A stretch of DNA of 63,578 bases, counting the filler, from Octopus bimaculoides (taxonomy: Eukaryota): assembly GCF_001194135.2 (NCBI RefSeq). It is 6 parts of 5 records of this genome, joined end to end, with 100 filler letters (N's around TTAATTAATTAA, not from the genome) between each part and the next. Parts side by side here need not be neighbours in the genome. Positions count along the whole stretch, not along the records: positions 13,324 to 42,188 come from NC_068985.1; 5 more parts are not named here. One strand, 5' to 3'. Positions 13,850-42,188 of the stretch are shown here, piece by piece. Made by a program: the position numbers and the translations under genes. Positions within the stretch are counted from its first letter, which is position 1; every line of letters begins with the position of its first letter. The notes under the pieces were generated by a model. It ran no database searches, was not told where the DNA came from, and worked only from the letters and a program-made list of their open reading frames with translations.

Positions 13850-14165
13850 CATATGTGGCACGTGAAAAGACATTCGAGCGAGTTCGTTGCCAGTACTGCT
13901 GGACTGGCCCTTGTGCAGGTGGCGCGTAAAATACACCATTTTGAGCGTGGCTGTTGTCAGTACCTCCTGACTGGCTTTCGTGCTGGTGGCACATAAAAGC
14001 ACCCACTACACTCTCTGAGTGGTTGGCGTTAGGAAGGGCATCCAGCTGTAGAAACTCTGCCAAATCAGATTGGAGCCTGGTGTAGCCATCTGGTTTCACC
14101 AGTCCTCCGTCAAATCGTCCAACCCATGCTAGCATGGAAAGCGGATGTTAAACGATGATGATGAT
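13850..14165 (+). mobile_element. RTE 3'-end copy
   Basis: aaagcacccactacactc...ggaagggcatccagctgtagaaac...ccatgctagcatggaaagcgga...(GAT)n, the same sequence as the LINE 3' UTR at 24520-24900. Confidence 0.75.
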
Positions 14166-14516: not shown

Positions 14517-14723
14517 GTTTCAGTGAAAATGGAAATGAACTATATGAAAATGACACCATTCCTTTTAGCCGTCTCCCGTGGTCACCTCGGAATGATCCAC
14601 AAATTGATAGCAAGGGGTGCAGAAGTAAATGCTCGCAACAATGAAGGCAACAATTGCCTGCACCTTGCTGTGAAGAAGGAGGTATTTCATTCTGAGGAAG
14701 AACCCTTAATTATTTTAAATGAG
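14517..14723 (+). CDS. Ankyrin-repeat exon (first identifiable coding exon)
   Basis: Encodes TPFLLAVSRGHLGMIHKLIARGAEVNARNNEGNNCLHLAVKK, ankyrin consensus. Pyrimidine tract plus AG at 14515-14516; donor GAG|gtaag at 14724. An alternative acceptor at 14522-14523 is possible. Confidence 0.88.
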
Positions 14724-15274: not shown

Positions 15275-16425
15275 ATATATATTAGGCCTCACCGAGGCAA
15301 TGACTTCTGACCGAGACCTTTGGAAATATACTGTGCGTGAGAAGACCCGGCAAGCCAAGTAAGACCAAAATCCAACGCCTCTGCCTGGGGTGTAGCCAGC
15401 ACACTTACGCATAACACTCCTTCTTTGGACAATAAACTCTGCTTGCGAAGACCTGTTGGGGCAAGCGAAAGCGAAATCGTGATGGCACCTGTACCAGTAG
15501 ATCACTAAGAGCACCGTCCGAGCGTGATCATTGCTAGAGCACCAGCTGTCTGGTTTTTGTGCCGGGGGCATGTAAATAGCACCATTTGAGCGTGATCATT
15601 ACCAACATTGCCCTCCTGGCACATGAAAAGACAGTACCGCTGGACTGGCTCCTGTGCAGGTGGCACATAAAATACACCATTTCGAGCGTGGCCGTTGCCA
15701 GTACCTCCTGACTGGCCTTCGTGCCGGTGGCACGTAAAAACACCCACTACACTCTTGGAGTGGTTGGCATTAGGAAGGGCATCCAGCTGTAGAAACTCTG
15801 CCAAATCGTCCAACCCATGCTAGCATGGAAAGTGGACGTTAAACGATGATATATATATATATATCGTCGTCGTCGTTTAACGTCTGCTTTCCNNNNNNNN
15901 NNNNNNNNNNNNNNNNNNNNNNNNNNNNNNNNNNNNNNNNNNNNNNNNNNNNNNNNNNNNNNNNNNNNNNNNNNNNNNNNNNNNNNNNNNNNNNNNNNNN
16001 NNNNNNNNNNNNNNNNNNNNNNNNNNNNNNNNNNNNNNNNNNNNNNNNNNNNNNNNNNNNNNNNNNNNNNNNNNNNNNNNNNNNNNNNNNNNNNNNNNNN
16101 NNNNNNNNNNNNNNNNNNNNNNNNNNNNNNNNNNGCCACGCTCAAAATGGTGTCTTTTATGTGCCACCCGCACAAGCCAGTCCAGGGGCACTGGCAACGA
16201 TCTCACTTGAAAATCCTACGGGAGCCAGTCAGGCGGTACTGGCAACGGCCACGCTCAAAATGGTGCATCTCATGTGCCACCCGCACAAGAGCCAGTCCAG
16301 GGGCACTGGCAACGATCTTACTTGGCTTGCCGGGTCTTCTCACGCACAGCACATTTCCAAAGGTCTCGGTCAGTAGTCATCGCCTCGGTGAGGCCCAATG
16401 TACGAAGGTCTTGCCTCACCACCTC
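15275..16425. mobile_element. Tail-to-tail pair of RTE 3'-end copies (gap inside the second)
   Basis: The + copy ends ...gttaaacgatgat(at)n; the minus copy begins immediately with cgtcgtcgtttaacgtctgctttcc. Confidence 0.75.
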
Positions 16426-16888: not shown

Positions 16889-17064
16889 TGCTGCACTGAG
16901 CTCAAACTGAGAAATGAAAACCGGCTCTCGGGTGTAGTGGTTGCTAGTTACCTGGCCCTCCAGGGAGCTGACTTTTACTGTAAAAACAAAAATGGCATAG
17001 CACCACTGGACCTCATTAAAAATGCAAAATTGAATATTAAAGTAATGACATTATTCCCACCACA
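16889..17064 (+). CDS. Degenerate ankyrin-repeat exon
   Basis: tttgtag|TGC...CA|gtaagt. Reads CCTELKLRNENRLSGVVVASYLALQGADFYCKNKNGIAPLDLIKNAKLNIKVMTLFPP (GAD...N..G..PL ankyrin-like). Phase 0 in and phase 2 out match its neighbours. Confidence 0.85.
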
Positions 17065-19313: not shown

Positions 19314-19456
19314 ATGTCGCTGGTGTCAAGAGAAAAAGGCCTCTGTCACACTTCATCCATGTCAACATATTCTTGTTTGTGAGAACTGCTGTTCTGAAAT
19401 GACATTTAAGAGATGCCCCATGTGTCGACAAAGCGTACTCAGGAAAAGTGGATTTG
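19314..19456 (+). CDS. C3HC4 RING finger exon (IAP/MIB-type)
   Basis: CRWCQEKKASVTLHPCQHILVCENCCSEMTFKRCPMCRQSV. Acceptor tacatag, donor G|gtaag; phase 2 in, phase 1 out. Confidence 0.92.
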
Positions 19457-22094: not shown

Positions 22095-22145
22095 AAAGTC
22101 CAATGTTTGAAGAGAAAGAAGTGCAGACAGTTTCAGATGCAGTTA
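22095..22145 (+). CDS. Mini-exon 1 (51 nt, phase 1-1): ESPMFEEKEVQTVSDAV
   Basis: atttatttcag acceptor, gtgagt donor, open frame, KEVQT motif. Confidence 0.75.
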
Positions 22146-22364
22146 GTGAGTATAAATTAACAGTAACTAATTGATTTCTATAACGTTCAACTTCAGGTTA
22201 AGCAAAACGTTTCAAGTGAAAGCTCCACAGGTTTCATTCCTAATTTCCATTTAAAAGGTTATCTGAGAAGTAATTCTATTTAAGAGATTACTGAAATTTC
22301 ATAAAATCAGGGTTAGCATGGTTGGTAAAATGGACAAAGTCAGACGACACAATAGAATTAATAG

Positions 22365-22562
22365 TGCCGTCTGACTGGCTCCCATGCCAGTGGCACATAA
22401 AAAGCACCCACTACAATCTTGGAATGGTTGGTGTTAGGAAGAGCATCCAGATGTAGAAACCTTACCAGATTGGAGCTTGGTGCAGCCTCGTGGCTTGCTA
22501 GTCCTCAGTCAAACCGTCCAACCCATGCCAGCATGGAAAGCGGACGTTAAATGAAGATGATA
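22365..22562 (+). mobile_element. RTE 3'-end copy
   Basis: Same 3' UTR family with gatga tail. Confidence 0.7.
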
Positions 22563-24204
22563 ATGATTGTCTTTTAGAATAGAGAACTAAAGTGTTATTT
22601 ATGTGTAAACATGGGACTTAATTAGAATATTTTTGTTTCTTTTTCTGCTAAGATTTCCGATAGGTTAGGGTTGTTGTTGATGTTATTGTCGAGCCAGATG
22701 TCCGTCAAATCATGTCGTCTTTTGATGGGGTAGATATCCAGAATGTCTTTGACTAGAATATATATTGAAGTTGTAAATTAAAACAATACTATATTAACTC
22801 TGTATAAGAATATTGCTCATTAAATTACTTCTAATTAATGTTTAATTTTATATTGAACTGTGAACATCTGTTTACATTTAAACAAAGTATTGGTATTAAG
22901 ATGAAATATACAGATAGGAATAAAATATGAGTTGTTGGTGTGATTTGAACACACATATCCCTGTTGGTAACTGTATATGATTAACACCAGCTATATTCCT
23001 GGAATAACATTTATTATCCATATAGGCATTCTTGTATTCACACTTATTGGCATTTAGATGATATCAATACTAAGAGAGGAATAGTTTTCTGAGGCTTTAC
23101 CTTTAAGTTTTGCTTCTGACTTGGTTGTTACATTCAAATTAGATTACGAAATCTGGTGATTGTTATTTGACCAGGAAAAAAAAAAATTACTATTTCATTT
23201 GGTGCTGGACCTGGTAACCTTTTACCTTGACTGCTTATGGAACTACCATAATATCAACTATGCTGAGACACAATCGTATTCATTGTAATGAATAACACAT
23301 GTTCTTTAATCGAATTATATACAGTCTGTAAGAATATATAGTATCACAATATCAGGCAATGTCCTATTGTACTTTCCATATACTCTATTAACATGATAAT
23401 TAATCTGCTATCATTCAGTAACTCTTTTATACTTGTATATCTTAAATTTAATCATATTTTTTTTGTCACAGCATCATCTTCTACCCTCATCTTACATTTT
23501 ACTCCTAGTTACCTTCTGTGCATTTCTACTGCTTTTCTTGGATACAAAACCACATCCATACAAACTGAGATTATTGACTTCTCTAATCCTGTAATGTCTA
23601 GATGTTCTTGTGTCTTGTCTTCATTCCATATGAAATAATATGTGAATCGTTTCTGTGTATTTATGTGACACTAATTAGATATATTTTATAAAGCAAGATA
23701 GTGACATTTTTAATTAGTTGATCTCAATTAGCATTGGTTACAAATGTGGTATAGTAGTGGCGATGGAGTGTAATGCGAGTAGGGTTACATATTTCTTGTA
23801 ATGTTCTTATATTAATAATGCCATCAAAGAGACAGTTTCTGTCAGTTAAGCTCTTCTGCATGGATGTAATCTTGTGTCTTCGAAGATGTTTGTCACTGGG
23901 ATTTTGCTCTTTTGAAGTCAACCACATTGATATAGTAGATATGAAAGGAGCGGGCAAGAATTTTTGACTAATGTTTAGAAGGGGTTTGACAGAGATCTTT
24001 TCTATTCTTGTGAACCAGGCCTTATGTACCATTTCAGATATTTTCACTGCAATTGGTGGATGTCCAGATGAGCATAAGAAAATGTAAGCCAAAACCATAT
24101 TGTTCACCACTTGACCATTGATGATCAGAACGTCTCACAATAATATAATGTAGATTAGCAGAGATACTCGGCCTTGCTTGGGATTAAAATAGCATAGTTG
24201 TTTT

Positions 24205-24520
24205 ATTGTTTTACTTGTTTCAGTCACGTGACTGCGGCCATACTGGAGCACCGCCTTTAGTCGAACAAATAGACCCCAGGGTTTATTCATTGTAAGCTAG
24301 TACTTATTCTATCAGTGTCTTTTGCCAAACCGTTTAGTTATGGGAACGTAAACACAGCAACATCGGTTGTCAAGTAATAATGGGGGTACATACACAGGCA
24401 CAAACAAATGCGTGCGCACGCACACACACAAATATGCACATATCTACAACAGACTTCTTTCAGTTTCCATGTACGAAATCTACTTGCAAGGCTTTGGTTG
24501 GCCTGAGGCTATGATATCGT
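24205..24520 (-). mobile_element. SINE
   Basis: gactgcggccatactggagcaccgcc...gtacttattctatcag...gtaaacacagcaacatcggttgtcaag, shared family core. Confidence 0.6.
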
Positions 24521-25910
24521 CGTCATCATCGTTTAATGCCCGTTTTCCATGCTGGCATGGGTTGGACAGTTTGACTGGAGACTGGCAAGCCAGGAGGCCA
24601 CACCAGGTTCCAGTCTGATCTGGCAATGTTTCTACAGCTGGATGCCCTTCCTAACGCCAACCACTCCGAAAGTGTAGCAGGTGCTTTTTACATGCCAGCG
24701 GCATGGGAGCCAGTCAGTCTGCACTGGCATTGACCACATTCAGATGGTGCTTTTTATGTGCCACGAGCACGGGGAGCCAGCTAGGCAGTGACCCACACAT
24801 GGATGTATGGTGCTTATTGTGTGCCACCAGTACTGATAATGGCCACAACTACAATTTCCATTTGGTTGTGATTTAATTTGATTTTGATTTACTTGACTCA
24901 ATAGGTTTCCTCAAGGATGGCATTTTGCCCGACGATTCAAAGGCACTTTTTAAATGGGCTGCTTATGCGACACGGGTGTAGGCTATGGCTGTGATCTCAC
25001 TTTCCTTGCCGAGTCTTCTCAATCACAGCATATCTCCAGAGGTCTCAATCTTTCGTCATTGCCTCTGTGAGGCCCAACATTCAAAGGTCATACTTGACCA
25101 CCTCATTTCATATCTTCCTGGGTCTACCTCTACCCCGGATTCCTTCAACTGTTTGGGAGTGGCACTTCTTCACACAGCTCTCCTCATCCATCCATAGTAC
25201 ATGACCATACCAACACAAACGTCTCTCTTGCACACTGCATCTGATGCTTCTTATGTCCAACATTTCTCTCAGGGTGCTTACACTGTCGTGTGTGCACACT
25301 GACATAACACATCCAGCGGATCTTGCCAGCTTCATTTCTTTCGAGCCTACGCATGTCTTCAGCAGTCATGGCCTGTGTTTCACTGCTGTGTAGCATGGCT
25401 ATTCGCAGACATGCATCATACAATCTACCTTTCACTCTGAGCGAGAGGCCCTTTGTCATCAGTAGGGGTAGAAGCTTTCTAAACTTTGCCCAGGCTATTC
25501 TTATTCTAGTGGCAATGCTCTCTGAGCATCCACCCTCACTACAGATTTGGTCACCTAGGTAGCAGAAGCTATCAACTACTTCTAGTTTCTCCCCCTGGAG
25601 TGGGATGGAATCAGTTTTCTGAGCATCTATGGTGTTTATTGCCCCTGGGCATCTGCTACATAAAAAAGCTATCTTCCCAGTTAACCTTCCTTTGATGTTG
25701 CTGCACCTCTTATGCATCCATAGCTTACACTGGGTACATCTTATAGAGTTTCTACCTATACCTTTTCTACAGATTGATCAGGGCCAGCTACCTGAAGGCG
25801 TTTGTGATGTGTTTGCCTTCCTAATTACTAGGACTTTGGTTTTTGCAACATTGACTCTAAGGCCCTTCGATTCTAAACCTTGCTTCCACACATGAAATTT
25901 CTTCTAGTTC
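24520..25910 (-). mobile_element. RTE-clade LINE, 3' part of RT plus 3' UTR
   Basis: GLRVNVAKTK...LEVVDSFCYLGD...RIRIAWAKFRKLLPLL...WYGHVLWMDE...RGRGRPRK, then the 3' UTR ending in a (GAT)n tail. Confidence 0.88.
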
Positions 25911-25954
25911 TGGTTGTGATTCTGCAATGAGAGCAAGGTTGATTTTTATTATAG

Positions 25955-26055
25955 ATTTGGAGCCTGGTGTAGCCATCTGGTTCACCAGTCCTCAGTCAAA
26001 TCGTCCAACCCATACTAGCATGGAAAGCGGACGTTAAACAATGATGAACGATGAT
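25955..26055 (+). mobile_element. Short RTE 3'-end copy
   Basis: ttggagcctggtgtagccatctgg...ggacgttaaacaatgatg. Confidence 0.65.
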
Positions 26056-26163
26056 ACATACATACATACATATANNNNNNNNNNNNNNNNNNNNNNNNNN
26101 NNNNNNNNNNNNNNNNNNNNNNNNNNNNNNNNNNNNNNNNNNNNNNNNNNNNNNNNNNNNNNN

Positions 26164-26218
<55 letters not shown>

Positions 26219-26400
26219 ATATATATATATATTTTTATATATATATATGTATGTATGTATATATGTAATGTGAGATAATAGTTTCATTATGTATATATCA
26301 TATACATTGTGAAACTATTATCCCACATTACAATAGAGATGTTATTGTTTCACTTTTGACATGTATTACTGAAACAGTCTAAGAGATTGCTCCGGGCTCG

Positions 26401-26568
26401 CACTAGACAAGAAGTTGAAAATTTCTTTGGCCCATTAAACTCCATGGATCCTAACTAACGCATGTGTAAAATTTGAATGAAATCGGTTGGGTAGTTCTCG
26501 AGTTTTAGTGATGCACACAAACAAACAGACAGATGGACGCACATGCTCAGTTTTATATATACAGATTA
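26401..26568 (+). mobile_element. Helentron-associated (HINE/DINE-like) short element
   Basis: Starts actaga, contains aaatttgaatgaaatcggttgggtagtt...acaaacagacagatggacg, and ends ttttatatatacagat, the typical layout of such elements. Confidence 0.45.
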
Positions 26569-26629
26569 TGGATGAAGATTAAAAAATAAATTGATAATAA
26601 AGTGTAAAACTTGCAAATATTTATTTCAG

Positions 26630-26683
26630 TGAGACCAAAATCAGTGACAAAGCAAGTCCAGACAGTTGCATCCACTTCAGAAA
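26630..26683 (+). CDS. Mini-exon 2 (54 nt, phase 1-1): xRPKSVTKQVQTVASTSE
   Basis: atttatttcag acceptor, gtaagt donor, open frame, KQVQT motif. Confidence 0.72.
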
Positions 26684-27158
26684 GTAAGTGTCAAATAACT
26701 GAACATAATTAATTTCTATAAATATTACCTTCACCTGAGCTACTGTTTGTCAGAATGACTGGGAACAGGGCCCATTCCTATTTTCCATTTGAAAGTAAGA
26801 TGTAAAACGATTCTATGAATTATATTACTGAAAAAAGAAAATGAAAAAGGAAAGACAAAACTAAGAGATAAACAGTGTTATCGAGGAGTAAGATGAGAGA
26901 GTTTCAGAATTGCTAAATAGTGTAGGGTGTCTCAATAGAGAGAGGACGATCCAAAACCAATTGAACTCATTGGTGGTAGGGTTTTCACTAGAAATGTGGT
27001 ATTGAAGCATTTGCTTAGATAAAGGTTGTAATATTTTAATTTTATTTTCCGTATCATTTTCATGCCATCATTTCTGACGGCACGGGCACACTAGTAGATT
27101 AATAATAGAGATAAAGTTGTTTTCTATTAAGTATAAAACTTAGAAACACATATTTCAG

Positions 27159-27209
27159 AGGCTTCAAAGATGAAAGAGAAAGGAGTCCAGACGGTGGCTG
27201 AGGCAGCTG
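27159..27209 (+). CDS. Mini-exon 3 (51 nt, phase 1-1): xASKMKEKGVQTVAEAA
   Basis: catatttcag acceptor, gtgagt donor, open frame, KGVQT motif. Confidence 0.72.
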
Positions 27210-27978
27210 GTGAGTATGAATTAAGAGTATCTAATTCTTTGCTATAAAGTTTACCTTCACCTGAGTTATTTTGTTTGTCAGAATGTCTGGGAGCAGGTTC
27301 TTCTTTCCTAATCTCCACCTGAAAGGTTGGCTGTAAAGTAATTGCATTAAATGTTATAATGAAATTCCATTCACCGAATACCAGTTTCTGTTCTGGCAGT
27401 GTAGAATGAATCATTATTCACCTTTTAAAATGCTACTTTATTAAGGTGTCTTGAAATATTTCCTCAATCAGACACCAACAGCAATGTTTCACAAAAGAGT
27501 AGCTGTATGTTTATCCTACCTGAGGTTGTGTGTTGTGTTTGTGGCCAGATCTTTGATGATCAACTTGGTTGACATTCATACAACACGTAAGAGGTGGACA
27601 ATGTTGTTTTGAGATGTCTAGAGGAGAGAGGACAGTGTGAAGTAATAGATTTGGCACTAAAATAGGAAATGAAAGAGAAAACTAAGTAAAAATTTGTTAT
27701 CAATTGATAATTGAATGAGATTATTGCAGAATTATCACATTATACAGAATGTTTCAATAAAGGAATGGGATCTAGAAATTTAATCTAGTTTGTGATGACT
27801 CAAAATACTGAGCTATTACACAACACTGTTGAGCCTGTAAAAATGTTAGCCAAAACCATATTGGTCACTAGTTGACCACTGATGATCAGTACAACTCATA
27901 ATGAAATAATATAGATTATTGATGAAGATTAAAAAAAAATTGATAATAAAGTGTAAAACTTGCAAATATTTATTTTAG

Positions 27979-28032
27979 TGAGGCCAAAATCAGTGACAAA
28001 GCAAGTCCAGACAGTTGCATCCACTTCAGAAA
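27979..28032 (+). CDS. Mini-exon 4 (54 nt, phase 1-1): xRPKSVTKQVQTVASTSE, near-identical to mini-exon 2
   Basis: atttattttag acceptor, gtaagt donor. Differs from mini-exon 2 by one synonymous change (AGA/AGG). Confidence 0.7.
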
Positions 28033-28449
28033 GTAAGTGTCAAATAACTGAACATAATTAATTTCTATAAATATTACCTTCACCTGAGCTACTGTTTGTC
28101 AGAATGACTGGGAACAGGGCCCATTCCTATTTTCCATTTGAAAGTAAGATGTAAAACGATTCTATGAATTATATTACTGAAAAAAGAAAATGAAAAAGGA
28201 AAGACAAAACTAAGAGATAAACAGTGTTATCGAGGAGTAATTAGATGAGATAATTGCAGAATTATTAAATAGTGTAGGGTGGAAATTTAGGAATGTGAAT
28301 CTATTTTATTGTAGACTTAAATATTGAGTTATTCCTTAGTAACACTGTGGGAATTTTTTAAAATGTTAACCAAAACCATTGTGGTCATCAGTTGAATGTT
28401 GTTGAAAGAAACGTCTCATCTCAAAATAATAAAATATTGTATATTAATA

Positions 28450-29815
28450 AAGATGAAGAAATTTTACTCATCATTGTTTCACTGTTGTACCTGTGCACCT
28501 TCCACACTCAGAAACTATTTTGCCAGTTAACTTTCCTTCGATCTTGCTGCACTTGTTATGAGTCTATAGTTTGCACCGGGTAATCTTATGAAGTTTATAC
28601 CACCAATGCCTTTCCTACAGATCGAGCAGGGCAATCTACTTGAAGGGATTTGAGATTTACCTGCTCTCCTACATTCTAAGACTTTGGTTTTTGTTTAGCT
28701 CTAAGACTCTTTGACTCCAGATCTTGCCTCCAGGGTTGAGATTTCTTCTCCAGTTGAGGTAGGGAATTGATTATAAGAACAAGGTCATCAGCACAGAGGA
28801 TCTCCCAGTGGTAGCATGTCTTAAATTCCTCTGTTAATCCCTGAGGACTATGATGAACAATACGGGGCTGAGGACTGATCCTTGGTGAACCCCTACTTGT
28901 ACACTGAATTCCTGGCTATGCCTGTTGGTAATCTTCACCTTACTGACAGCATTTCTGTACTTGGCCTGTACAGTTCCCTCCAAACACTCATCTATCCCTA
29001 GCTTCCACATTGATCACCAGATAAGGGAATGGGGGACTCTGTCAATGGCTTTCTCTGTGTCAACAAATGTCAGGTACATGGGTTTCTTTTTGGCTAGATA
29101 TTTCTTCTGCAGTTGCCTAACTAGGAATATAGTGCTGGAACAAATCCGAACTGCATTTAATCTACTCTAATATTTCTCTCCCTAATTGATTGAGCTATGA
29201 CCTTCTCTGGGATTTTCATCAACTGGTCCAGCTGTTTGCTGCCTCTGTAATTATTCCTGTCCAAGGCTTCACCTTTGCCTTTGTAGCAGTTGACTATGAT
29301 GTTGCTATACCAATTGTTGGGTATGACTCCCTTGTGGAAAACCTGATTAACTATACGGGTGGCTTAGCCTCCTGTATAGTCTGCCAGATATTTTAAGCAT
29401 CTCAGCAGAAATTTCTAATGGGCTGGGGGGTTTCCCCTGTCTTCATGTCCTTAATTGCTTTATCTACTAAGCTACTGTTGATTCGGATAGCTGGTCCCCT
29501 CAGTTGGGTCAACATCTCGCAGAAGACTCTTCCTCCCATTCATTCTCCACATTTAGCAGTTTTAAAAATGGCATTTCCAAGCCTCTTTTTTTGCAGAATC
29601 ATTAAATGCACGTGAAGCATTATCCATGCAGGCACATTTCTCTTGTATGACCTCATGATTTTCTCTCACACACTGTCTTGCAATCGGAAACACTTCAAGT
29701 CTTTTGGTCCTCATGTCGTTTTTGCTACTCCCTTGACTAGATGTACTTGTCTCCTAGCTTCTCATCTAGCTATGTGATACAGTTCCCTGCTACCCCTATT
29801 CTTCCACTCCTATAC
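28450..29815 (-). mobile_element. RTE-clade LINE RT-domain fragment (same family as 24520-25910)
   Basis: The minus strand reads GVHQGSVLSPVLFIIVL followed by a degenerate YADD region, and contains the same Cys-rich insert. Confidence 0.8.
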
Positions 29816-29854
29816 AGTGCTATGAAATATAAAACTTGCAAACACATATTTCAG

Positions 29855-29905
29855 AGACTCTGATGATGGAAGACAAGCAAGTCTGGACGGTGACAGAAGC
29901 AGTTG
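29855..29905 (+). CDS. Mini-exon 5 (51 nt, phase 1-1): xTLMMEDKQVWTVTEAV
   Basis: catatttcag acceptor, gtgagt donor, open frame. The motif Q is replaced by W. Confidence 0.65.
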
Positions 29906-30854: not shown

Positions 30855-31260
30855 TATTTTTATGAAACGAACTGTAAAGAAATAGCTGGAGGTAGTTGGT
30901 AGCTTTCTTTCTTTAGGTAGCAATGTCAATAACAGATGTGGATGCTGTGAGAGCGTAGCTGGGAGAATAAGAATAAGCTGGGCAAAGTTCAGATTTGCTT
31001 TGCTTTCGAAGAAGACCCATCAAGTCGAGTGGGATCGTAGTCATGGCAGATACTGGTGTCATGCAAGTAGCACCCATGTTGGTGGCATGTAAAAGGACCT
31101 GTTACGCTTTCAGAGTGGTTGGCATTAGGAAGGGCATCTAGCTGTAGAAAGCATGCCAAATGAGACTGGAGTCTGGTGCAGCCCCTCAGCTTTCCATCCC
31201 TGGTCAAATCGCCCAACCCATGCTAGCATGGAGAATGTACATTAAATGATGATGAGGAGG
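30855..31260 (+). mobile_element. RTE LINE fragment plus 3' end
   Basis: LEVVGSFLSLGS...GRIRISWAKF, then the ggaagggcatc...ccatgctagcatgg...gatgatga tail. Confidence 0.65.
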
Positions 31261-32608
31261 ATGTGGATGAACTGAGTTGACATCAGAAATAAACAAAATG
31301 AGATAAATGTTGTTTAGTGAAGGAGGGCTCTTGTCTATTTGGTTGTGGTTCTAAATATTTAGCTTATCACATATTGTTACAACTTAGTAGTTTTGACCAA
31401 AAGCATGGTTGGTCACCAGTTGACCATTTATGATAGAAATGTTTTACAATAATAAAATGTAGATCATTAATTCTTTCGTTACTGTATTTGAGATGCTCTG
31501 TGTTTCTTTCAATTACTTTAACTATAACAAAGAATTTAGTAAAATAATTTAGTTATCATTCAACTAGTGTTAAGAACATAAATTGTAACTAAGGTTTGGT
31601 GGAAGATTTTAATTCACAACTTAAGAAAACATTTGTACTCAAAGCCAGAGCTGGTTTCAACCAGGTTGGTAATGAAAGGGTTAATAAAGATAGTGAAATT
31701 ATGCTATAAAATGTAAAACTTGGAAATATCAGTCATTTGGTTTGAGATTGTTATGGAGATGTTACGTAGATCACCTAAGACAGCATCAGTGGATGACATA
31801 ACAATACTAACGACAGAGCAAAATGGTATGCAAATAGTTCTCGATGGACTGGATTAACTAATTAGTTGGTCAAGAATGTGGTTTAAGGCAATAAATAATG
31901 TTGTCAGTTGCCAAAGGTCAACAGAAACAAGTGAAATTCAAAGAAGCAGGAGAAACCATGCCAAAGGATAAAGACAGACCTGTAAACTGTTGAGGACAAT
32001 GGTACACCACCTCATTGTCCAACAAAAGTAGAGGCATTGAGATCATGGCACAAAGAGAAGACACCTTATAAGCAATAGATAAGTCAAAACTTTTTGGAAA
32101 TAAAGGATTTAAAAAAAATTATTTATTAAGGAGTCTTAAAAAAAATGTTTCCTGAATCAGATGATGTTCTTGTGAACTGGGATGTGGGGAGTTATGATTC
32201 AAGATTACAAACAACAACCCTTAACAAAGAAGTTAGGTATATGTTTATCCTACATGTCTGCCATTGTATTTGTGGTTAGATCTTTGGAAAGCACCTTTGT
32301 TTGACATTGGAATTAAGCAGAAGATGAGAAGAATGTTAGTGAAGTCAAATCATAGATATAAGGAAGGAAATAGAGAGTACCAAGAAAAAAACCAGTCTTA
32401 TCAAATGATAATTAAATGACGTCTTAATAGAGAAACGAGATTTAGGAAGGTTAATCTATTTTGTTGAGAACCTATGGGACTACATGGGACCACTGTAGAA
32501 AGATAAAAAAAGTTGAACAAGACCATAGTGGTCACCAGTGGACCATTGACAGTAAGAATGCCTCAGTAATAAGGAATAGATTATAAACCTTGGAAATATT
32601 TATTTCAG

Positions 32609-32680
32609 AGAGTCGAAAGCTGGAGGAGAAGGATCTTCTGAGGGTGGCCAAGAGGTTAGGAAGTGATTGGTGGCAAGTGG
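32609..32680 (+). CDS. Death domain exon 1 (72 nt, phase 1-1): ESRKLEEKDLLRVAKRLGSDWWQV
   Basis: atttatttcag acceptor, gtgagt donor. L..VA..LG.DW matches death-domain helices 1-2. Confidence 0.85.
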
Positions 32681-34137: not shown

Positions 34138-34337
34138 GTGTTTTTTTAGGTATTGAAATTACTGAGCTGGAAATTGATGATGGTTCTAATAACACTGTAA
34201 AACAGGGCTACAATATGCTGTACGAATGGTTTACAAGTTGTGATCCACAAACACGAATACTCGAAACATTAAGTGCAGCTCTTGAAGAAGCTGAGTGTTT
34301 GACTGCACTTGAGTGCTTGTCATTAGTTGCAGAGTGA
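34138..34337 (+). CDS. Terminal exon, death domain C-terminal part
   Basis: ttgcag acceptor. GVFLGIEITELEIDDGSNNTVKQGYNMLYEWFTSCDPQTRILETLSAALEEAECLTALECLSLVAE* fits the death-domain pattern LG...EL..I / Q...ML..W / L..AL. Confidence 0.85.
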
Positions 34338-36230: not shown

Positions 36231-39030
36231 GATGCATCTGTTTCTGGCTTCACACCCCAGCGGAAACTTGAATCGTCTTCCAGCCATGCTCAGAGAAATG
36301 AACAGCGGTCAGTTCGTGTATGTGCTTGTGTGTGTGTGTGCATGTATGTGATTGTCCCACATGAAACTGCCATACAACAAAATTAGGAAAACAGTAAATG
36401 CAGGCATGGCAAAACATTTCCTTTTTTTACTGAATATTCCATTGAAGACGATGCTGCTTTTTACAGCTCACTTGTTGCCAATATCTGAAATTGAGCCAAG
36501 GGTTATGGCATGGCATACCTGGTATTGTAAAAGATATCACCAAAGTGTCAGTGATTCAGATGGCTGTCTTTATTTCCTGCGTACGTCCACCACCAGAGGA
36601 GAGAATGTGAACCCCATTTCAAATGACGAGATTGACACATTTTCAGCAGCAATCTGTCGGGGAACTTAGAGCTACCTAGATAGACAGACAGATAGGTAGA
36701 TAGCCAACCAGTCAGAGAGACAACATCATATATATATATATATATAGATAAAGAGGGACAGACAGACAGAGTGAGAGGAAGCTGCTTGTAGGTTTAGGTG
36801 TGACTACATCAACTTAGGAGGTGCATGGACACAACAGGAAAAGCATAAAAGCTCTCACCAGACAGAATGGATTGCCTGCTATTTATCCGACTTTTGATTT
36901 GACAACGGGGTAACGGCACATCTTTGTGACCTGTCCCTTTGTAATTGTTCGCCTCATTTAAAATAGACATGCACCAGTCACCATGGACGTAGCTGCTCCC
37001 CAGATACCAACCTGTCCAGTATGCCTTGAATGATCGCTGCTCTTCTGTCGGTTGAATTGAGCACGAAAGAGTGGGTGTTTGTTAGGGATGCTGAGACAGG
37101 CAGACTTTTTTATTTGTCAGGTGATGACAGCTTCAAATACCTATGTTTTCTTTGGTGGAATTCAGCGTGAAGGAGCAGGTGTCTGTCAGGACCTGCAAAA
37201 CTAGTGGTTTTCTATCTTTATCGGACAAAGACAATGGCAAGTATATCATTGGCAGAAATAAGACAGAGGTAGACACAGGTCTGGCTCTCGGTGAAGCATT
37301 GCACTACAGCTTCTTCAGAATTGGAATCAGAGGCTGGAATGACTGTGTGGACATATCTATGAAAGGAAGGTGGACAGAGTAACATCCATTGAGTGCAGAC
37401 GTCGCCGGGGCCATTTCACTTTGCTCAATTTCTGAGTGTATTGAATTTGTTCAGGAGTGGAGTCTGCATTGGTAACTGCCTGAGAGTTGAAGCACGTGAG
37501 GATGGCAGGGCTCAAAGTCATCGTCAGTCACTCATCATATGACAGCCTCTCATGCGAAGACTTGGACACTAATGATAGTCTACAATGAAGATCTGTAGTA
37601 GCCATTACCAAGTTCTCCTGTGTGGCACAGAACATTTAGAATGGCCTTTCCCAAATTAAATTACAACAAAGTGTTTGGAACAGATTCTTTCTGTGACATA
37701 TTGAAATAGTGTCAATAGATTCCTTTACTAAGTAAATTATTTTTGTCCTGCACCAGTCCTCAGTCACTTCAACTTTATACCACAAATCTCTACTTTTATA
37801 TAATGTTTAGAACAAAACTGAGTAACTTTCAATGGTACACCATGTCCTGTTGCTGCAGACTGGTTTTGCTTTATTCCAAAAGCGATAACTTCATGGAATA
37901 CCACTATTTGAAGCAGTAAAGTGAGATATGTTCTTCAGCCAATGATGGAGGGAAGCGGTATTGAAGAAGAACTCACTTTGACCGTGTACGCTCATCCATT
38001 CCATGGGAGGCTGGAAGTCTTAAGATAGACGTTGAGGACATTTTCATTGAATATATTGCATCTTGCAATCTGTACCTGTCTTGGAAAAAGCTTCTAGTAC
38101 ATGTCTGCTGACAAACCTTCTATGGCACACCATCACCTGATGCTACAATCCACTCTTGCTTTATTTCCAAACTATTTACTTCTTTCTTGCTGCAAACTCT
38201 AGGCTCAAAAGTTTGAATCAGGCCTTTGGTAGACATTTTATTAGAGATGACAATGTTTCTCCTGCTTGTGCTATAATAAAATGCACCTAGAACCCTTTAT
38301 AAAGTGGTTGGTGTTAGGAATGACATGGCATTCTATAAAGTCAGTAATGTTTAAGTGAGATATGTTCCTCAATCAATGAAGGAGAGAAAGAATTCTGAAG
38401 AACAACTGACTTGAACAGTGACAACTCATCCAATCCATGGGAGCTTGGAAATATGAGGATGAATGGTAGGGATGTTTGTCATTGATTGTATTGCATTTTG
38501 CAACCTGTATCTACCTTGAAGAATGAGAGAGAGAGAGAGACAAAGATTGTAACAACAGCAAAGAAAAGTTCTCTGCTTGGAATGTAAGGATAAAATTACT
38601 GTGAAATAAGATAGGGTGCTTATACGTGGAACGCATTTCATTTGTCATTCTTTCAGTTTATGAGAGATGTTCGCTTAAATAATAACTACAACCATATCCT
38701 ATCAGTAAACTTTAAAAAAAATGTAAAACAACCAAAAATGCTGTCCTTAACTCAAATGTTTATCACTAAATGACTTATTTTAGATCTCTCTTCCAAAATA
38801 TTATATTAACTGGATTCTCTTTTAAATGTTCCACTTTACAAACCATGCTAACCTCGTTGGATAATTTGTGAAATTTCAGTAATATCAATATGTTTAATAG
38901 AATTACTATACAGCAAAGTTTTCAAATGTAAATTAGGAATGGAACCTGTTCTCTGTCATTCTGATATACAAAGTCTCAGGTGAAGGTAAACTTTATAGAA
39001 ATGGATAAGTTAATGTTAGTTTCTATTTAC

Positions 39031-39111
39031 ATGGTTCCTCTGATTTTTTTCTTAGAAGACACTAATGTGGTGTGAAATCAGGCCAGTCATTGTCTGAAAT
39101 ACTTGGTTTGT
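39031..39111 (-). pseudogene. Inverted pseudo-exon homologous to the death-domain exon 1 / mini-exon unit
   Basis: The minus strand has an attcatttcag acceptor and a gtaaat donor 81 nt apart (phase 1-1), reading DKPSISDNDWPDFTPH*CLLRKKSEEP. The intron after it (38830-39030, reverse complement) aligns by eye with 32681-32870. Confidence 0.55.
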
Positions 39112-39439
39112 CTGAAATGAATATTTTCATGTTTTACATTTTAGAATATGATTTGATTATATTTATTTATAATCTATATTTGATTATTGTGAGACATTTT
39201 TATCTTCAGTTGTTGACGGGTCACCACTATGCTTTTAGTAAGCACCATTTACGGTTTCACTATGTGTTTTTTGTTTTTAGTTTTGTCTTTCCTGTTGTAT
39301 GTCTTTGTCTTTAATGGAGTTTAAGGCACAGATATAAGAAAATAAAAACAAAAGTAAAAGGACATTGTTATAAAAAGGTGATTACGTGAAATAATTGCAG
39401 TATTGTTAAATTAAATTGGATGTCTTAATACAGTGGGGT

Positions 39440-41679: not shown

Positions 41680-42188
41680 CTGCTTTTTGGGTTGAACCAA
41701 ATTTGATGACTGGCACCTGTGCCGGTGGAGTGCTAACAGCACCATCCGAGTGGGGTCACTGCAAGAGCAGCGGTCTCGCTCCCGTGCTGGTGGCACATAA
41801 AAAGCACCATTTGAGCGCGATCGTCTCCAGCTTTGCCTTGCTGTCACTTGTGTCGGTGGCATGTGAACAAAACATTGGACTGACTGACTCCTGTACAGGT
41901 GGCATGTAAAATACACTATTTGAGCGTGACCATTGCCAGTACCGTGGGACTGGCTCATGCAGGTGGCACGTAAAAAGCATCCACTACACTCTCGGAGTGG
42001 TTGGCATTAGGAAGGGCATCCAGCTGTAGAAACTCTGCCAGATCAGATTGGAGCCTGGTGTAGCCATCTGGTTTGCCAGTCCCCAGTCAAATTGTCCAAC
42101 CCATGCTAGCATGGAAATCATCATCGTTTAACATCCGCTTTCCATGCTAGCATGGATTGGACGATTTGACTGAGGACTGGTGAAACTG
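41680..42188. mobile_element. RTE 3'-end copy (+) followed tail-to-tail by a minus copy
   Basis: ...ccatgctagcatggaaatcatcatcgtttaacatccgctttccatgctagcatgg... Confidence 0.7.

What the first reader, a model, noticed from the sequence alone, without database searches (positions are those of the whole stretch)
22095..29905. Exon-encoded multivalent LC8/DYNLL-type motif array (K-x-V-Q-T x4) between a RING and a death domain
Seen: four consecutive mini-exons each encode K-x-V-Q-T (KEVQT, KQVQT, KGVQT, KQVQT), with the Q residues 17-18 aa apart in a polar, probably disordered linker. Established: LC8 (DYNLL1/2) is a dimeric hub that binds K-x-T-Q-T and VQT variants in disordered regions. Tandem arrays form ladder-like duplexes (ASCIZ/ATMIN, yeast Nup159). 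Many RING E3s and death domains act through dimerisation or oligomerisation. Inference: LC8 could zipper two chains of this protein, setting RING activity and death-domain presentation, with one binding site per exon. I know of no described ANK-RING-(QT)n-DD system.
Basis: partly seen in the sequence, partly recalled or inferred. Interest (0 to 1): 0.88.

Follow-up and report, generated by a model that had tools for sequence, protein, structure and literature searches.

The report
Duplicated mini-exon motif array in octopus
An already annotated Octopus bimaculoides gene for an ankyrin-RING-death-domain protein carries five tandemly duplicated, optionally spliced mini-exons, copied from the first death-domain exon, which build a floppy linker with a repeated K-x-V-Q-T-V motif; whether that motif binds the dimer-maker LC8 is plausible but untested.

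Summary
On the + strand there are five 51/54-nt mini-exons: A 22095-22145, B 26630-26683, C 27159-27209, D 27979-28032 and E 29855-29905. All have AG/GT splice sites and phase 1-1. They encode KEVQT, KQVQT, KGVQT, KQVQT and a fifth, degenerate KQVWT. They lie between a RING exon and two death-domain (DD) exons. My conceptual splice is an exact substring of RefSeq XP_014776758 (O. bimaculoides "MIB2 isoform X1"). Two other RefSeq isoforms skip D, or C plus D.

The assembly gap sits in intron A-B inside a TA microsatellite. It cannot affect the reading frame, but it is unresolved in the public assembly.

The mini-exons and their intron flanks are copies of DD exon 1. In an O. vulgaris paralogue the same unit forms a 166-bp exon-plus-intron minisatellite. 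Splice flanks and the K-x-V-Q-T-V codons are conserved, with synonymous variation, while the rest of each exon drifts. AlphaFold2 predicts the linker to be disordered.

LC8 binding is compatible but unproven. In favour: VQT is a validated anchor, the linkers are 9-10 aa, and paralogues carry KETQT. Against: valine at +2 is disfavoured, my scores are ambiguous, and about 30% of family modules have K instead of the key Q. I put LC8 at roughly 0.2-0.25.

The parts
14517..14723 (+). Ankyrin-repeat exon (residues ~210-278 of RefSeq isoform X1). The gene's 5' part lies outside the piece.
   Evidence: The ORF with splice sites was read. tblastn with P0066 gives 91% identity. Pfam Ank hits.
16889..17064 (+). 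Exon for the last ankyrin-region helices.
   Evidence: tblastn with P0066 gives 100% identity over residues 281-339.
19314..19456 (+). RING exon (C3HC4, IAP/MIB type). It ends in phase 1.
   Evidence: Pfam zf-C3HC4_3 at 38 bits, above the cut-off of 27.
22095..22145 (+). Mini-exon A, 51 nt, encoding SPMFEEKEVQTVSDAV.
   Evidence: TTTCAG acceptor and GTGAGT donor, frame 2. Present in all three RefSeq isoforms.
26075..26163 (.). Assembly gap (89 N) inside intron A-B, flanked by TACA/TA microsatellite.
   Evidence: The same gap is present in GCA_001194135.2. The transcript model joins A to B across it.
26630..26683 (+). Mini-exon B, 54 nt, encoding RPKSVTKQVQTVASTSE.
   Evidence: It belongs to the 300-nt repeat 26582-26881, which is 99% identical to 27931-28230.
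27159..27209 (+). Mini-exon C, 51 nt, encoding ASKMKEKGVQTVAEAA. It is skipped in the 528-aa isoform.
27979..28032 (+). Mini-exon D, 54 nt, a near-identical duplicate of B. It has a TTTTAG acceptor and one synonymous difference from B. It is skipped in isoform X2.
29855..29905 (+). Mini-exon E, 51 nt, encoding TLMMEDKQVWTVTEAV, with W in place of Q.
   Evidence: Present in all three isoforms.
31703..31729 (+). Relic of the conserved upstream intron flank with no exon attached.
   Evidence: nhmmer hit at E=0.005, matching model positions 3-29 only. The sequence was read.
32609..32680 (+). Death-domain exon 1, 72 nt, encoding SRKLEEKDLLRVAKRLGSDWWQV. It is the parent of the mini-exon family.
   Evidence: It is a member of repeat families D8 and D11 together with the mini-exons. 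Alignment A1.
34138..34337 (+). Death-domain exon 2, including the TGA stop codon.
   Evidence: tblastn gives 100% identity. DD profile hits.
38974..39143 (-). Degenerate inverted copy of the exon-plus-flank unit, about 4.6 kb downstream of the stop codon. It has no donor site, an in-frame stop and no motif.
   Evidence: nhmmer at E=5e-12 on the minus strand. The sequence was read.

Best explanation
The array is a set of tandemly duplicated cassette micro-exons. An 'exon plus short intron' unit containing death-domain exon 1 was copied head to tail. The copies lost 18-21 internal nucleotides and became 51/54-nt, phase 1-1 exons, any subset of which can be spliced in frame between the RING exon and the true DD exon 1.

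Together they encode an intrinsically disordered tether. Each module carries one constrained short linear motif, [ED]-K-x-V-Q-T-V. The number of modules (3, 4 or 5 in the RefSeq isoforms), and so both the valency and the RING-to-DD distance, is set by alternative splicing. Over evolutionary time it is set by unequal crossing-over and by exon birth and death.

Shown:
- the exon structure, and the homology of the mini-exons to DD exon 1;
- annotated isoforms that differ by whole modules (indirect: RefSeq predictions, no junction reads examined);
- predicted disorder of the linker;
- selective retention of the splice flanks and the motif codons;
- restriction of the family to Octopus.

Inferred: the motif is a docking site that adopts an extended, strand-like conformation on a partner. 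The best specific candidate for the VQT (and paralogous TQT) modules is the LC8/DYNLL dimer, which would pair two chains. That last step is unproven, and I put it at about 0.2-0.25.
For: Exon anatomy and one continuous frame. Exact identity to RefSeq X1. Isoforms that differ by whole modules: X1 has A-B-C-D-E, X2 lacks D, and the 528-aa form lacks C plus D. O. sinensis LOC115225502 has isoforms up to X17 that differ by the same kind of module.

Homology to DD exon 1, including both intron flanks: repeat families D8 and D11, alignment A1, and nhmmer E values of 1e-35 to 1e-40 for all six units.

Conservation pattern among the copies: intron -33..-1 is 83% identical, intron +1..+40 is 75%, and the exon body is 55%. 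Within the exon, the 18-nt K-x-V-Q-T-V core is 74% identical against 47-50% for the rest. Across 17 mini-exons from four loci, synonymous codons vary at K (AAA/AAG), V (GTC/GTG/GTA), Q (CAG/CAA), T (ACA/ACG/ACT) and V (GTT/GTG/GTA).

Dead copies as natural controls. The O. vulgaris copy with a CAA acceptor has decayed to KDALTT. The O. sinensis copy has CAG changed to TAG and an AT donor.

An O. vulgaris paralogue holds six modules in a 166-bp period, each a 51-nt exon plus a 115-nt intron.

AlphaFold2 gives the linker pLDDT 31-40 with no secondary structure.

Family range: 97 representative clusters at E<=1e-3 out of 1.84 billion. The named RING-linker-DD members are all Octopus; the three non-Octopus clusters I looked up were echinoderm and matched in the DD region (one unnamed ENA hit aside).
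Against: I could not examine RNA-seq junction reads, so exon use rests on RefSeq (Gnomon) models and on sequence signatures.

The copies are related by descent, and possibly by gene conversion, so the conservation statistics are not independent samples and the exons are very short.

Part of the conserved core (K at -3, a hydrophobic residue at -1, V at +2, A at +3) is inherited from DD helix 1 (EEKDLLRVA). The purine-rich 5' half of each exon could serve as a splicing enhancer.

No partner is demonstrated.

No close orthologue was found. The best non-self hit is 54% identical, although the O. vulgaris locus is also near a chromosome start. True orthologue conservation therefore could not be measured.
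Confidence: 0.6

Rival explanations
1. The VQT modules are bona fide LC8/DYNLL sites, and LC8 dimers ladder two chains in register. That dimerises the RING and presents paired death domains, and splicing tunes the valency.
For: VQT anchors occur in validated binders: MAST1 RHQSVQTE, SON RCVSVQTD and ZFPM1 SDKGVQTP. Gephyrin's EDKGVQCE is similar. K at -3 and an H-bonding residue at -4 fit the stated preferences.

The linker is predicted to be disordered. Linkers of 9-10 residues match the mid-length class (6 and 9 aa) that gave homogeneous duplexes.

The paralogues add support. Some carry KETQT two or three times at the same 17-aa period. Some paralogue modules score at or above the binder median in my PSSM: EDKGVQTD, EDKCVQTE, ENKEVQTP.

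The core is the conserved island of the exon.
Against: V at +2 is present in all window modules, but in only 1 of 79 binders against 4 of 32 non-binders. The paper stresses that many peptides containing the anchor do not bind.

My PSSM scores of 9.0-11.5 lie between the non-binder median (6.7) and the binder median (14.6).

Module E has W at position 0.

In the family census, 27 of 61 unique modules have VQT, 1 TQT and 1 SQT. By contrast, 11 have VKT, 5 VQA, 3 VKK and 2 VQM. Some paralogues, such as the O. vulgaris gene for P0043, have five VKT modules and one VQA, so no known LC8 anchor at all. A family-wide LC8 function is therefore unlikely.

No binding data exist.
Confidence: 0.22
2. The array is a passive spacer. 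The modules only set the length and flexibility of the tether between the RING and the DD. On this view the conserved core is a leftover of DD helix 1 ancestry, or reflects exonic splicing-enhancer constraints on very small exons, and is not a protein docking site.
For: Several core positions are shared with the parent exon: EEK-D-L-L-R-V-A against EEK-E-V-Q-T-V-S.

The strongest conservation is in the intron flanks rather than the exon.

Some family members have no module at all, with the RING followed directly by the DD, for example P0015, P0033 and P0051. Module number varies freely from 0 to 6.

Position 0 tolerates both Q and K.
Against: Amino acids in the core are kept while third codon positions vary. 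That points to protein-level rather than RNA-level constraint.

V-Q-T replaces the parental L-L-R and is then retained: T at +1 in 16 of 17 and V at -1 in 15 of 17 across four loci.

Copies that lost their splice sites also lost the motif. That is only two cases.
Confidence: 0.2
3. The mini-exons are annotation or assembly artefacts. On this view they are intronic repeats that happen to have an open frame, or haplotype duplicates, and are not part of the mature mRNA.
For: The window comes from a gapped short-read assembly. The chromosome-scale record re-uses the same contigs, and the piece is 100% identical to it, with the same gaps. B and D are 99% identical over 300 nt. I saw no read-level evidence.
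Against: Every copy has canonical splice sites, symmetric phase and length divisible by 3. The splice flanks are conserved.

The same architecture appears in the gap-free O. vulgaris assembly and in O. sinensis. RefSeq models several isoforms.

B and D differ at 9 positions plus 3 gaps over 378 nt, with C lying between them. That does not fit a simple collapse or duplication error.
Confidence: 0.05
4. The modules are SUMO-interaction motifs. The protein would then be an RNF4-like SUMO-targeted ubiquitin ligase, with tandem strand-forming motifs next to a RING.
For: The general layout resembles RNF4, with several short hydrophobic or beta-branched motifs in a disordered region beside a RING (my own knowledge). 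Some paralogue modules are more hydrophobic and end in acidic or Ser residues, for example AVQAVVESVV and VKTVVESF.
Against: Reading the window's linker directly, there is no [VIL][VIL]x[VIL] or [VIL]x[VIL][VIL] core. V-Q-T-V has only two aliphatic residues.
Confidence: 0.03

Closest known systems
Multivalent LC8/DYNLL clients (ASCIZ/ATMIN, yeast Nup159, Chica)
   Same: Several 8-residue motifs of K-x-[TV]-Q-T type sit in a disordered segment with short, regular linkers. The VQT anchor is documented in binders.
   Different: Binding has not been shown. The +2 residue is valine rather than P/D/E. The key Q is replaced by K in about 30% of family modules. The motifs are encoded one per exon in a duplicated exon array and are flanked by a RING and a DD, which the LC8 papers I read here do not describe (PMC6607443, PMC10046861).
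Mind bomb E3 ligases (MIB1/MIB2), the RefSeq name of this gene
   Same: Ankyrin repeats followed by a C-terminal C3HC4 RING of the zf-C3HC4_3 type.
   Different: Pfam finds no MIB/HERC2 or ZZ domain in the full-length protein. There is one RING rather than two or three, followed by a death domain. The RefSeq name reflects partial similarity, not orthology.
Tandem exon duplication with cassette or alternative splicing, and splice-variant control of short linear motifs (e.g. PMC3424572; NCoR CoRNR boxes, PMC4554918)
   Same: Neighbouring homologous exons share the same phase, and alternative inclusion changes the number of motifs in a disordered region.
   Different: The parent exon encodes the first helix of a folded death domain, and its copies were remodelled into a disordered motif. 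In a paralogue the unit is a 166-bp exon-plus-intron minisatellite.
Death-domain adaptors and kinases (RIPK1, ankyrin-3, PIDD, TRADD, FADD)
   Same: The C-terminal domain matches these death domains by profile, with E from 9e-10 to 1e-2.
   Different: Here the DD is combined with ANK repeats and a RING in one chain. The family is confined to Octopus as far as the searches reach.

Membership tests
LC8/DYNLL-binding multivalent clients | An 8-residue motif anchored by TQT or an experimentally accepted variant | tested here: met
   VQT is the anchor in 3 of the 79 LC8Pred training binders. Four window modules have VQT; the fifth has VWT.
LC8/DYNLL-binding multivalent clients | The motif lies in an intrinsically disordered region | tested here: met
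   In the AlphaFold2 model, residues 387-455 have pLDDT 31-40 and no secondary structure. This is a prediction only.
LC8/DYNLL-binding multivalent clients | Favourable flanks: an H-bonding residue or D at -4, K/R at -3, no bulky residue at -2, a strand breaker (P/D/E) at +2 | tested here: inconclusive
   K at -3 is met. Position -4 is E, T or E. Position +2 is V in every module, which occurs in 1 of 79 binders against 4 of 32 non-binders. My PSSM scores fall at the 16-28th percentile of binders and the 59-69th percentile of non-binders.
LC8/DYNLL-binding multivalent clients | Anchor (Q at position 0) conserved in homologues | tested here: not met
   In 50 unique family modules, position 0 is Q in 68% and K in 30%. 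V(-1) and K/R(-3) are each 92%. In 17 mini-exons from four loci, Q occurs 10 times, K 6 times and W once. No close orthologue was available.
LC8/DYNLL-binding multivalent clients | Direct binding to the LC8 dimer and formation of duplex ladders | not testable with these tools
   This needs ITC, pull-down, SEC-MALS or a multimer model. The structure tool here folds single chains only.
Mind bomb (MIB1/MIB2) E3 ligases | N-terminal MIB/HERC2 domains and a ZZ zinc finger, plus multiple C-terminal RINGs | tested here: not met
   Pfam on full-length P0066 finds only Ank families and one zf-C3HC4_3.
Death domain superfamily (PF00531) | Sequence match to the Death profile or to solved death domains, and a helical bundle | tested here: met
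   The window's DD scores 20.6 bits, below the cut-off of 22.6. However, 13 of 14 family members match (best E 1e-12), and the profile hits the RIPK1 DD at 8.8e-10 and the ankyrin-3 DD at 1.9e-9. The AlphaFold2 model has helices at 462-544 with high pLDDT.
Tandemly duplicated cassette exons | Adjacent exons homologous to each other including their splice flanks, with the same phase and length divisible by 3 | tested here: met
Tandemly duplicated cassette exons | Alternative inclusion observed in transcripts | tested here: inconclusive
   Three RefSeq isoforms differ by whole modules, but these are Gnomon models. I could not inspect reads.
RNF4-type SUMO-targeted ubiquitin ligases | Tandem SIM cores, [VIL][VIL]x[VIL] or [VIL]x[VIL][VIL] | tested here: not met
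   Direct reading of the linker sequence finds no such core.

The most novel reading that the evidence does not exclude
In an Octopus-specific, fast-turning-over family of ANK-RING-death-domain ligases, a minisatellite of 'exon plus intron' units born from death-domain exon 1 encodes a splice-tunable and copy-number-variable array of LC8-type K-x-[VT]-Q-T sites. On this reading, alternative splicing and unequal crossing-over set how strongly LC8 pairs two chains, and thereby set RING activity and death-domain oligomer seeding. Sister paralogues carrying VKT modules would be natural LC8-blind versions.
Probability: 0.18. Interest if true: 0.72.

Novelty: new variant of a known kind. Interest (0 to 1): 0.45.

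Why it matters
Two things would matter if the reading holds up.

The first is an evolutionary route. A folded-domain exon (helix 1 of a death domain) is copied together with its intron, trimmed, and converted into a disordered linear-motif module. The module number is then dialled by splicing and by repeat instability. This would be a compact case of how multivalent motif arrays arise.

The second is functional. If the modules bind LC8 or another dimeric partner, the family would link a ubiquitin-ligase RING and a death-domain oligomerisation module through a valency-tunable dimeriser. The lineage-specific expansion (all named RING-linker-DD members are Octopus) is suggestive of innate-immune or cell-death signalling, though this is not shown.

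The gene and its exons are already in RefSeq, so the new content lies in the interpretation, not in the existence of the gene.

Tried and rejected
- **Locus look-ups.** Looking up the chromosome-scale locus through isoform X2 (P0001) and through an O. sinensis isoform (P0004) found nothing on record. The longest isoform, P0066, worked.
- **Closing the gap.** The chromosome-scale record re-uses the same contigs and the same N runs. It neither closes the gap nor independently confirms the B/D duplication.
- **Orthologue search.** The best non-self hit is only 54% identical (O. vulgaris P0002). I could not measure orthologue conservation and used paralogues instead.
- **A second family gene on the minus strand.** tblastn with five family proteins finds none. 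The minus-strand nhmmer hit at 38974-39143 is a dead copy of the unit.
- **First attempts to segment the linker repeats.** Simple regular expressions were confused by the CPRC/CPKC modules. An iterated ungapped PSSM replaced them. It still missed a few modules next to the DD, which I added by hand.
- **LC8 score.** My score is a home-made log-odds matrix built from Table S4 of PMC6607443. It is not the published LC8Pred.
- **Mutually exclusive splicing.** Rejected, because the isoforms contain several modules at once.
- **SUMO-interaction motifs.** Considered and rejected by reading the linker sequence.
- **TRAF6 and sumoylation consensus sites.** Also rejected by reading the sequence.
- **CK2 sites.** A T-x-x-[DE] pattern is present in three modules, but it is too low in information to weigh.
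- **Intronic ORFs.** Pfam on five intronic ORFs gave only a weak PHD-finger match.
- **Octopus LC8.** I ran no further search on confirming that octopus encodes LC8. That is assumed from its near-universal conservation in eukaryotes.

Full report
**1. What is in the sequence**

The piece 13324-42188 is 100% identical to Octopus bimaculoides GCA_001194135.2, chromosome record CM046605.1, and carries the same N runs. On the + strand it holds the 3' two-thirds of one gene:

- two ankyrin-region exons, 14517-14723 and 16889-17064;
- a RING exon, 19314-19456;
- five mini-exons;
- two death-domain (DD) exons, 32609-32680 and 34138-34337 including the stop codon.

The five mini-exons are:

| Exon | Coordinates | Length | Peptide |
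|---|---|---|---|
| A | 22095-22145 | 51 nt | SPMFEEKEVQTVSDAV |
| B | 26630-26683 | 54 nt | RPKSVTKQVQTVASTSE |
| C | 27159-27209 | 51 nt | ASKMKEKGVQTVAEAA |
| D | 27979-28032 | 54 nt | same peptide as B |
| E | 29855-29905 | 51 nt | TLMMEDKQVWTVTEAV |

Each has a TTTCAG or TTTTAG acceptor and a GTGAGT or GTAAGT donor. Each has a length divisible by three and is flanked by phase-1 introns. The RING exon ends in phase 1 and DD exon 1 begins in phase 1, so any subset of the mini-exons splices in frame.

Joining everything gives a 352-aa open frame. That frame is an exact C-terminal substring of RefSeq XP_014776758, "E3 ubiquitin-protein ligase MIB2 isoform X1", 563 aa.

K-x-V-Q-T occurs four times, against 0.40 expected from dinucleotide shuffles, and none of 200 shuffles reaches 4. 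The copies are homologous, so this reflects duplication, not four independent events. The Q/W residues are 17, 18, 17 and 18 residues apart. It needs three additions: a fifth, degenerate module (KQVWT), the fact that B and D are a recent duplicate pair, and the position of the gap, covered next.

**2. The assembly gap**

The gap at 26075-26163 lies in the intron between A and B. It sits 3.9 kb downstream of A and 555 nt upstream of B, between a TACA/TA run and a long TA run. Reading frame across it is set by splicing, so continuity of frame is not an issue. The annotated mRNAs join A directly to B. The same 89 N persist in the chromosome-scale record. The true length of the gap, and whether it hides another unit, remain unknown.

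**3. The flanking domains**

- **RING.** Pfam finds ankyrin repeats and one zf-C3HC4_3 RING at 38 bits, above the cut-off of 27.
- **Death domain.** The C-terminal domain scores just below the Pfam Death cut-off (20.6 against 22.6 bits). However, 13 of 14 family members match PF00531. A family profile hits the solved death domains of RIPK1 (8.8e-10), ankyrin-3 (1.9e-9), PIDD, TRADD, Fas and FADD.
- **Not a Mind bomb orthologue.** There is no MIB/HERC2 or ZZ domain, so the RefSeq name "MIB2" reflects partial similarity only.

**4. Where the mini-exons came from**

The repeat finder groups the five mini-exons with DD exon 1, both at the acceptor flank (family D11) and at the donor flank (family D8). 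An alignment of the six units shows clear homology from about 35 nt upstream to about 90 nt downstream of the exon. A profile built from it recovers all six units at E values of 1e-35 to 1e-40.

At the protein level, SRKLEEKDLLRVAKRLGSDWWQV (DD helix 1) lines up with SPMFEEKEVQTVSDAV. The mini-exons are DD exon 1 minus 18-21 internal nucleotides.

Related loci show the intermediates and the mechanism.

- An O. vulgaris gene (L002, gap-free assembly) has two 78-nt modules (APKFEDRCVQTEATCQELGAASQAI) that keep roughly the parental length. It also has one 51-nt module (RLIFEDKEVQTVEESR) and one dead copy.
- Another O. vulgaris paralogue (L003) has six 51-nt modules in a perfect 166-bp period, each a 51-nt exon plus a 115-nt intron. 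This is an exon-plus-intron minisatellite.
- In the window the same short intron has been inflated by SINE-like and other repeats.

The "one motif per exon" pattern is thus explained by tandem duplication of an exon-plus-intron unit.

**5. Are the exons used, and what is constrained?**

I could not look at reads. The indirect evidence is as follows.

- *Isoforms.* Three RefSeq isoforms differ by whole modules: A-B-C-D-E, the same minus D, and the same minus C and D. An O. sinensis paralogue, LOC115225502, has isoforms numbered up to X17 that differ in the same way.
- *Splice flanks.* Among the copies, the 33 nt before the acceptor are 83% identical and the 40 nt after the donor are 75% identical. 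The exon body is 55% and more distant intron is 44-54%. The splice-proximal sequence is being kept.
- *Core codons.* Inside the exon, the 18 nt encoding K-x-V-Q-T-V are 74% identical, against 47-50% for the rest.
- *Synonymous variation.* Across 17 mini-exons from four loci, the conserved residues use varying synonymous codons. This indicates constraint on the peptide rather than on the RNA.
- *Dead copies.* Two copies that lost splice signals have also lost the motif. One has acceptor CAG changed to CAA and its core decayed to KDALTT. The other has donor GT changed to AT and the Q codon changed to TAG.

These samples are small and phylogenetically related, so I treat them as suggestive.

**6. 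Structure of the linker**

AlphaFold2, run with a 30-sequence family alignment, models the ankyrin repeats, RING and DD confidently. It gives residues 387-455 of isoform X2, exactly the mini-exon product, a pLDDT of 31-40 with no secondary structure. The linker is predicted to be disordered. This is a precondition for a linear-motif function.

**7. Testing the LC8 idea as far as possible**

The LC8Pred paper (PMC6607443) gives these rules:
- Q at position 0 is the most conserved residue.
- Positions -1 and +1 take mid-sized H-bonding or hydrophobic residues.
- Position -4 often forms an H-bond, and -3 prefers a large positive residue.
- Position +2 prefers P, D or E.
- Many TQT-containing peptides nevertheless do not bind.

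Its Table S4 lists VQT as the anchor in 3 of 79 binders: MAST1 RHQSVQTE, SON RCVSVQTD and ZFPM1 SDKGVQTP.

All window modules, however, have V at +2. That residue occurs in 1 of 79 binders against 4 of 32 anchor-containing non-binders. A simple log-odds matrix built from that table (not the published LC8Pred) scores the window motifs at 9.0-11.5. This corresponds to the 16-28th percentile of leave-one-out binders and the 59-69th percentile of non-binders, which is ambiguous. Module E (VWT) scores as a non-binder.

The spacing is favourable. With an 8-residue motif, the linkers are 9-10 residues. In ASCIZ, linkers of 6 and 9 residues gave homogeneous duplexes, whereas 3, 30 and 41 residues gave heterogeneous ones (PMC10046861).

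**8. Family-wide view**

All 65 sequence-search hits are Octopus proteins, from O. bimaculoides, O. sinensis and O. vulgaris. An exhaustive HMMER search of 1.84 billion representatives finds only 97 clusters at E<=1e-3. The distant clusters I looked up are Octopus, three echinoderm proteins matching in the DD region, and one unnamed ENA sequence. Members have 0 to 6 modules.

Over 50 unique 17-residue modules the logo is [CAS]-P-K-x-E-[DE]-K-x-V-[QK]-T-[VE]-[AV]-E-S-x-E:

| Position | Residue frequency |
|---|---|
| -1 | V 92% |
| -3 | K/R 92% |
| -8 | P 80% |
| 0 | Q 68%, K 30% |
| +1 | T 66% |

An anchor census over 61 unique modules gives VQT 27, VKT 11, VQA 5, VKK 3, VQM 2 and AQA 2. TQT, SQT and nine other triplets occur once each.

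About half of the modules therefore carry an LC8-compatible anchor. Some look strong (EDKGVQTD, EDKCVQTE, ENKEVQTP). O. sinensis paralogues carry the canonical NRTFEVKETQTLAEPV two or three times. The other half carry anchors never seen in binders, and some genes have only such modules.

A family-wide LC8 function is unlikely. A subfamily-specific one, including this gene, remains open.

**9. Best explanation and its rivals**

The best-supported account is a tandemly duplicated, alternatively spliced micro-exon array that builds a disordered, variable-valency tether between the RING and the DD. Each module carries one constrained K-x-V-[Q/K]-T-V motif that probably docks onto a partner in an extended conformation. 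My confidence in this is about 0.6.

| Reading | Confidence |
|---|---|
| LC8 as that partner in this gene (the best specific candidate) | about 0.2-0.25 |
| Pure spacer, with the core explained by DD helix 1 ancestry or by splicing enhancers | about 0.2 |
| Annotation or assembly artefact | about 0.05 |
| SUMO-interaction motifs (no SIM core is present) | about 0.03 |

**10. Novelty and score**

The gene and its exons are already annotated, and I found no paper on the family. Tandem exon duplication, and splice-controlled linear motifs, are known kinds (for example PMC3424572 and PMC4554918).

What is unusual is the conversion of a death-domain helix exon into a disordered motif module, its minisatellite-like amplification, and its position between a RING and a DD in a lineage-restricted family. 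I rate this a new variant of a known kind, with interest 0.45. If LC8 binding were demonstrated, the interest would rise to about 0.7.

Noticed in passing
L003 18950-19830 (O. vulgaris OX597842.1, gene of P0043): Six 51-nt modules (CPKCKEK/CPRCREK...VKTV..., CPKSEEKAVQAV...) are arranged in an exact 166-bp period, each a 51-nt exon plus a 115-nt intron. This is an exon-plus-intron minisatellite. The CPxC pairs recurring every 17 residues might bind zinc.
   Followed up: partly
L002 56706-56753 and L004 about 25315-25365: Two dead copies of the module. The O. vulgaris copy has acceptor CAA instead of CAG, and its core has decayed to KDALTT. The O. sinensis copy has the Q codon mutated to TAG and its donor changed from GT to AT.
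   Followed up: yes
window 38974-39143 (minus strand): A degenerate inverted copy of the exon-plus-flank unit lies about 4.6 kb beyond the gene's stop codon. It has no donor site, an in-frame stop and no motif. No family gene was found on the minus strand of the piece.
   Followed up: partly
window 31703-31729: An isolated relic of the conserved pre-acceptor sequence (ATGTAAAACTTGGAAATATCAG) with no exon behind it. It is probably the remains of a lost sixth module between E and DD exon 1.
   Followed up: no
window 22146-22175 and the equivalent donor flanks; proteins P0052, P0061, P0062, P0098: If a module's donor site is not used, the conserved intron start translates as (G/S)EYK(L/I)TV(T/A)N and then reaches a stop codon. 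Several RefSeq family models end in exactly GEYKITVAN, GEYKIPVPN or GEYKITALD. They are therefore truncated models or intron-retaining isoforms that would lack the death domain.
   Followed up: no
window 14109-14164, 15800-15855, 22508-22563, 25995-26050, 31203-31258, 42086-42141 and others: A SINE-like interspersed repeat (core GTCAAATCGTCCAACCCATGCTAGCATGGAAAGCGGACGTTAAACGATGATGA) occurs at least eight times on both strands in the introns. Both assembly gaps in the piece abut copies of this repeat and microsatellites.
   Followed up: no
window 25187-25777 (minus strand) and 28530-29363 (minus strand): There are long intronic ORFs on the opposite strand. The first has a weak PHD-finger match (E 2e-5). 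They are probably remnants of transposable elements that inflated introns A-B and D-E.
   Followed up: partly
L001 and L002 record coordinates: The O. bimaculoides gene lies 31-107 kb from the start of its chromosome record, and the best O. vulgaris relative lies 114-189 kb from the start of its record. This hints at conserved position despite only 54% protein identity, which would mean very fast divergence or paralogue turnover.
   Followed up: no
P0085/P0153 (O. bimaculoides LOC106882527): An adhesion-GPCR-like protein of 1283-1535 aa ends in the same type of death domain, preceded by a long (S/Q)STSQQ repeat. The DD of this family has therefore been attached to other architectures in octopus.
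   Followed up: no
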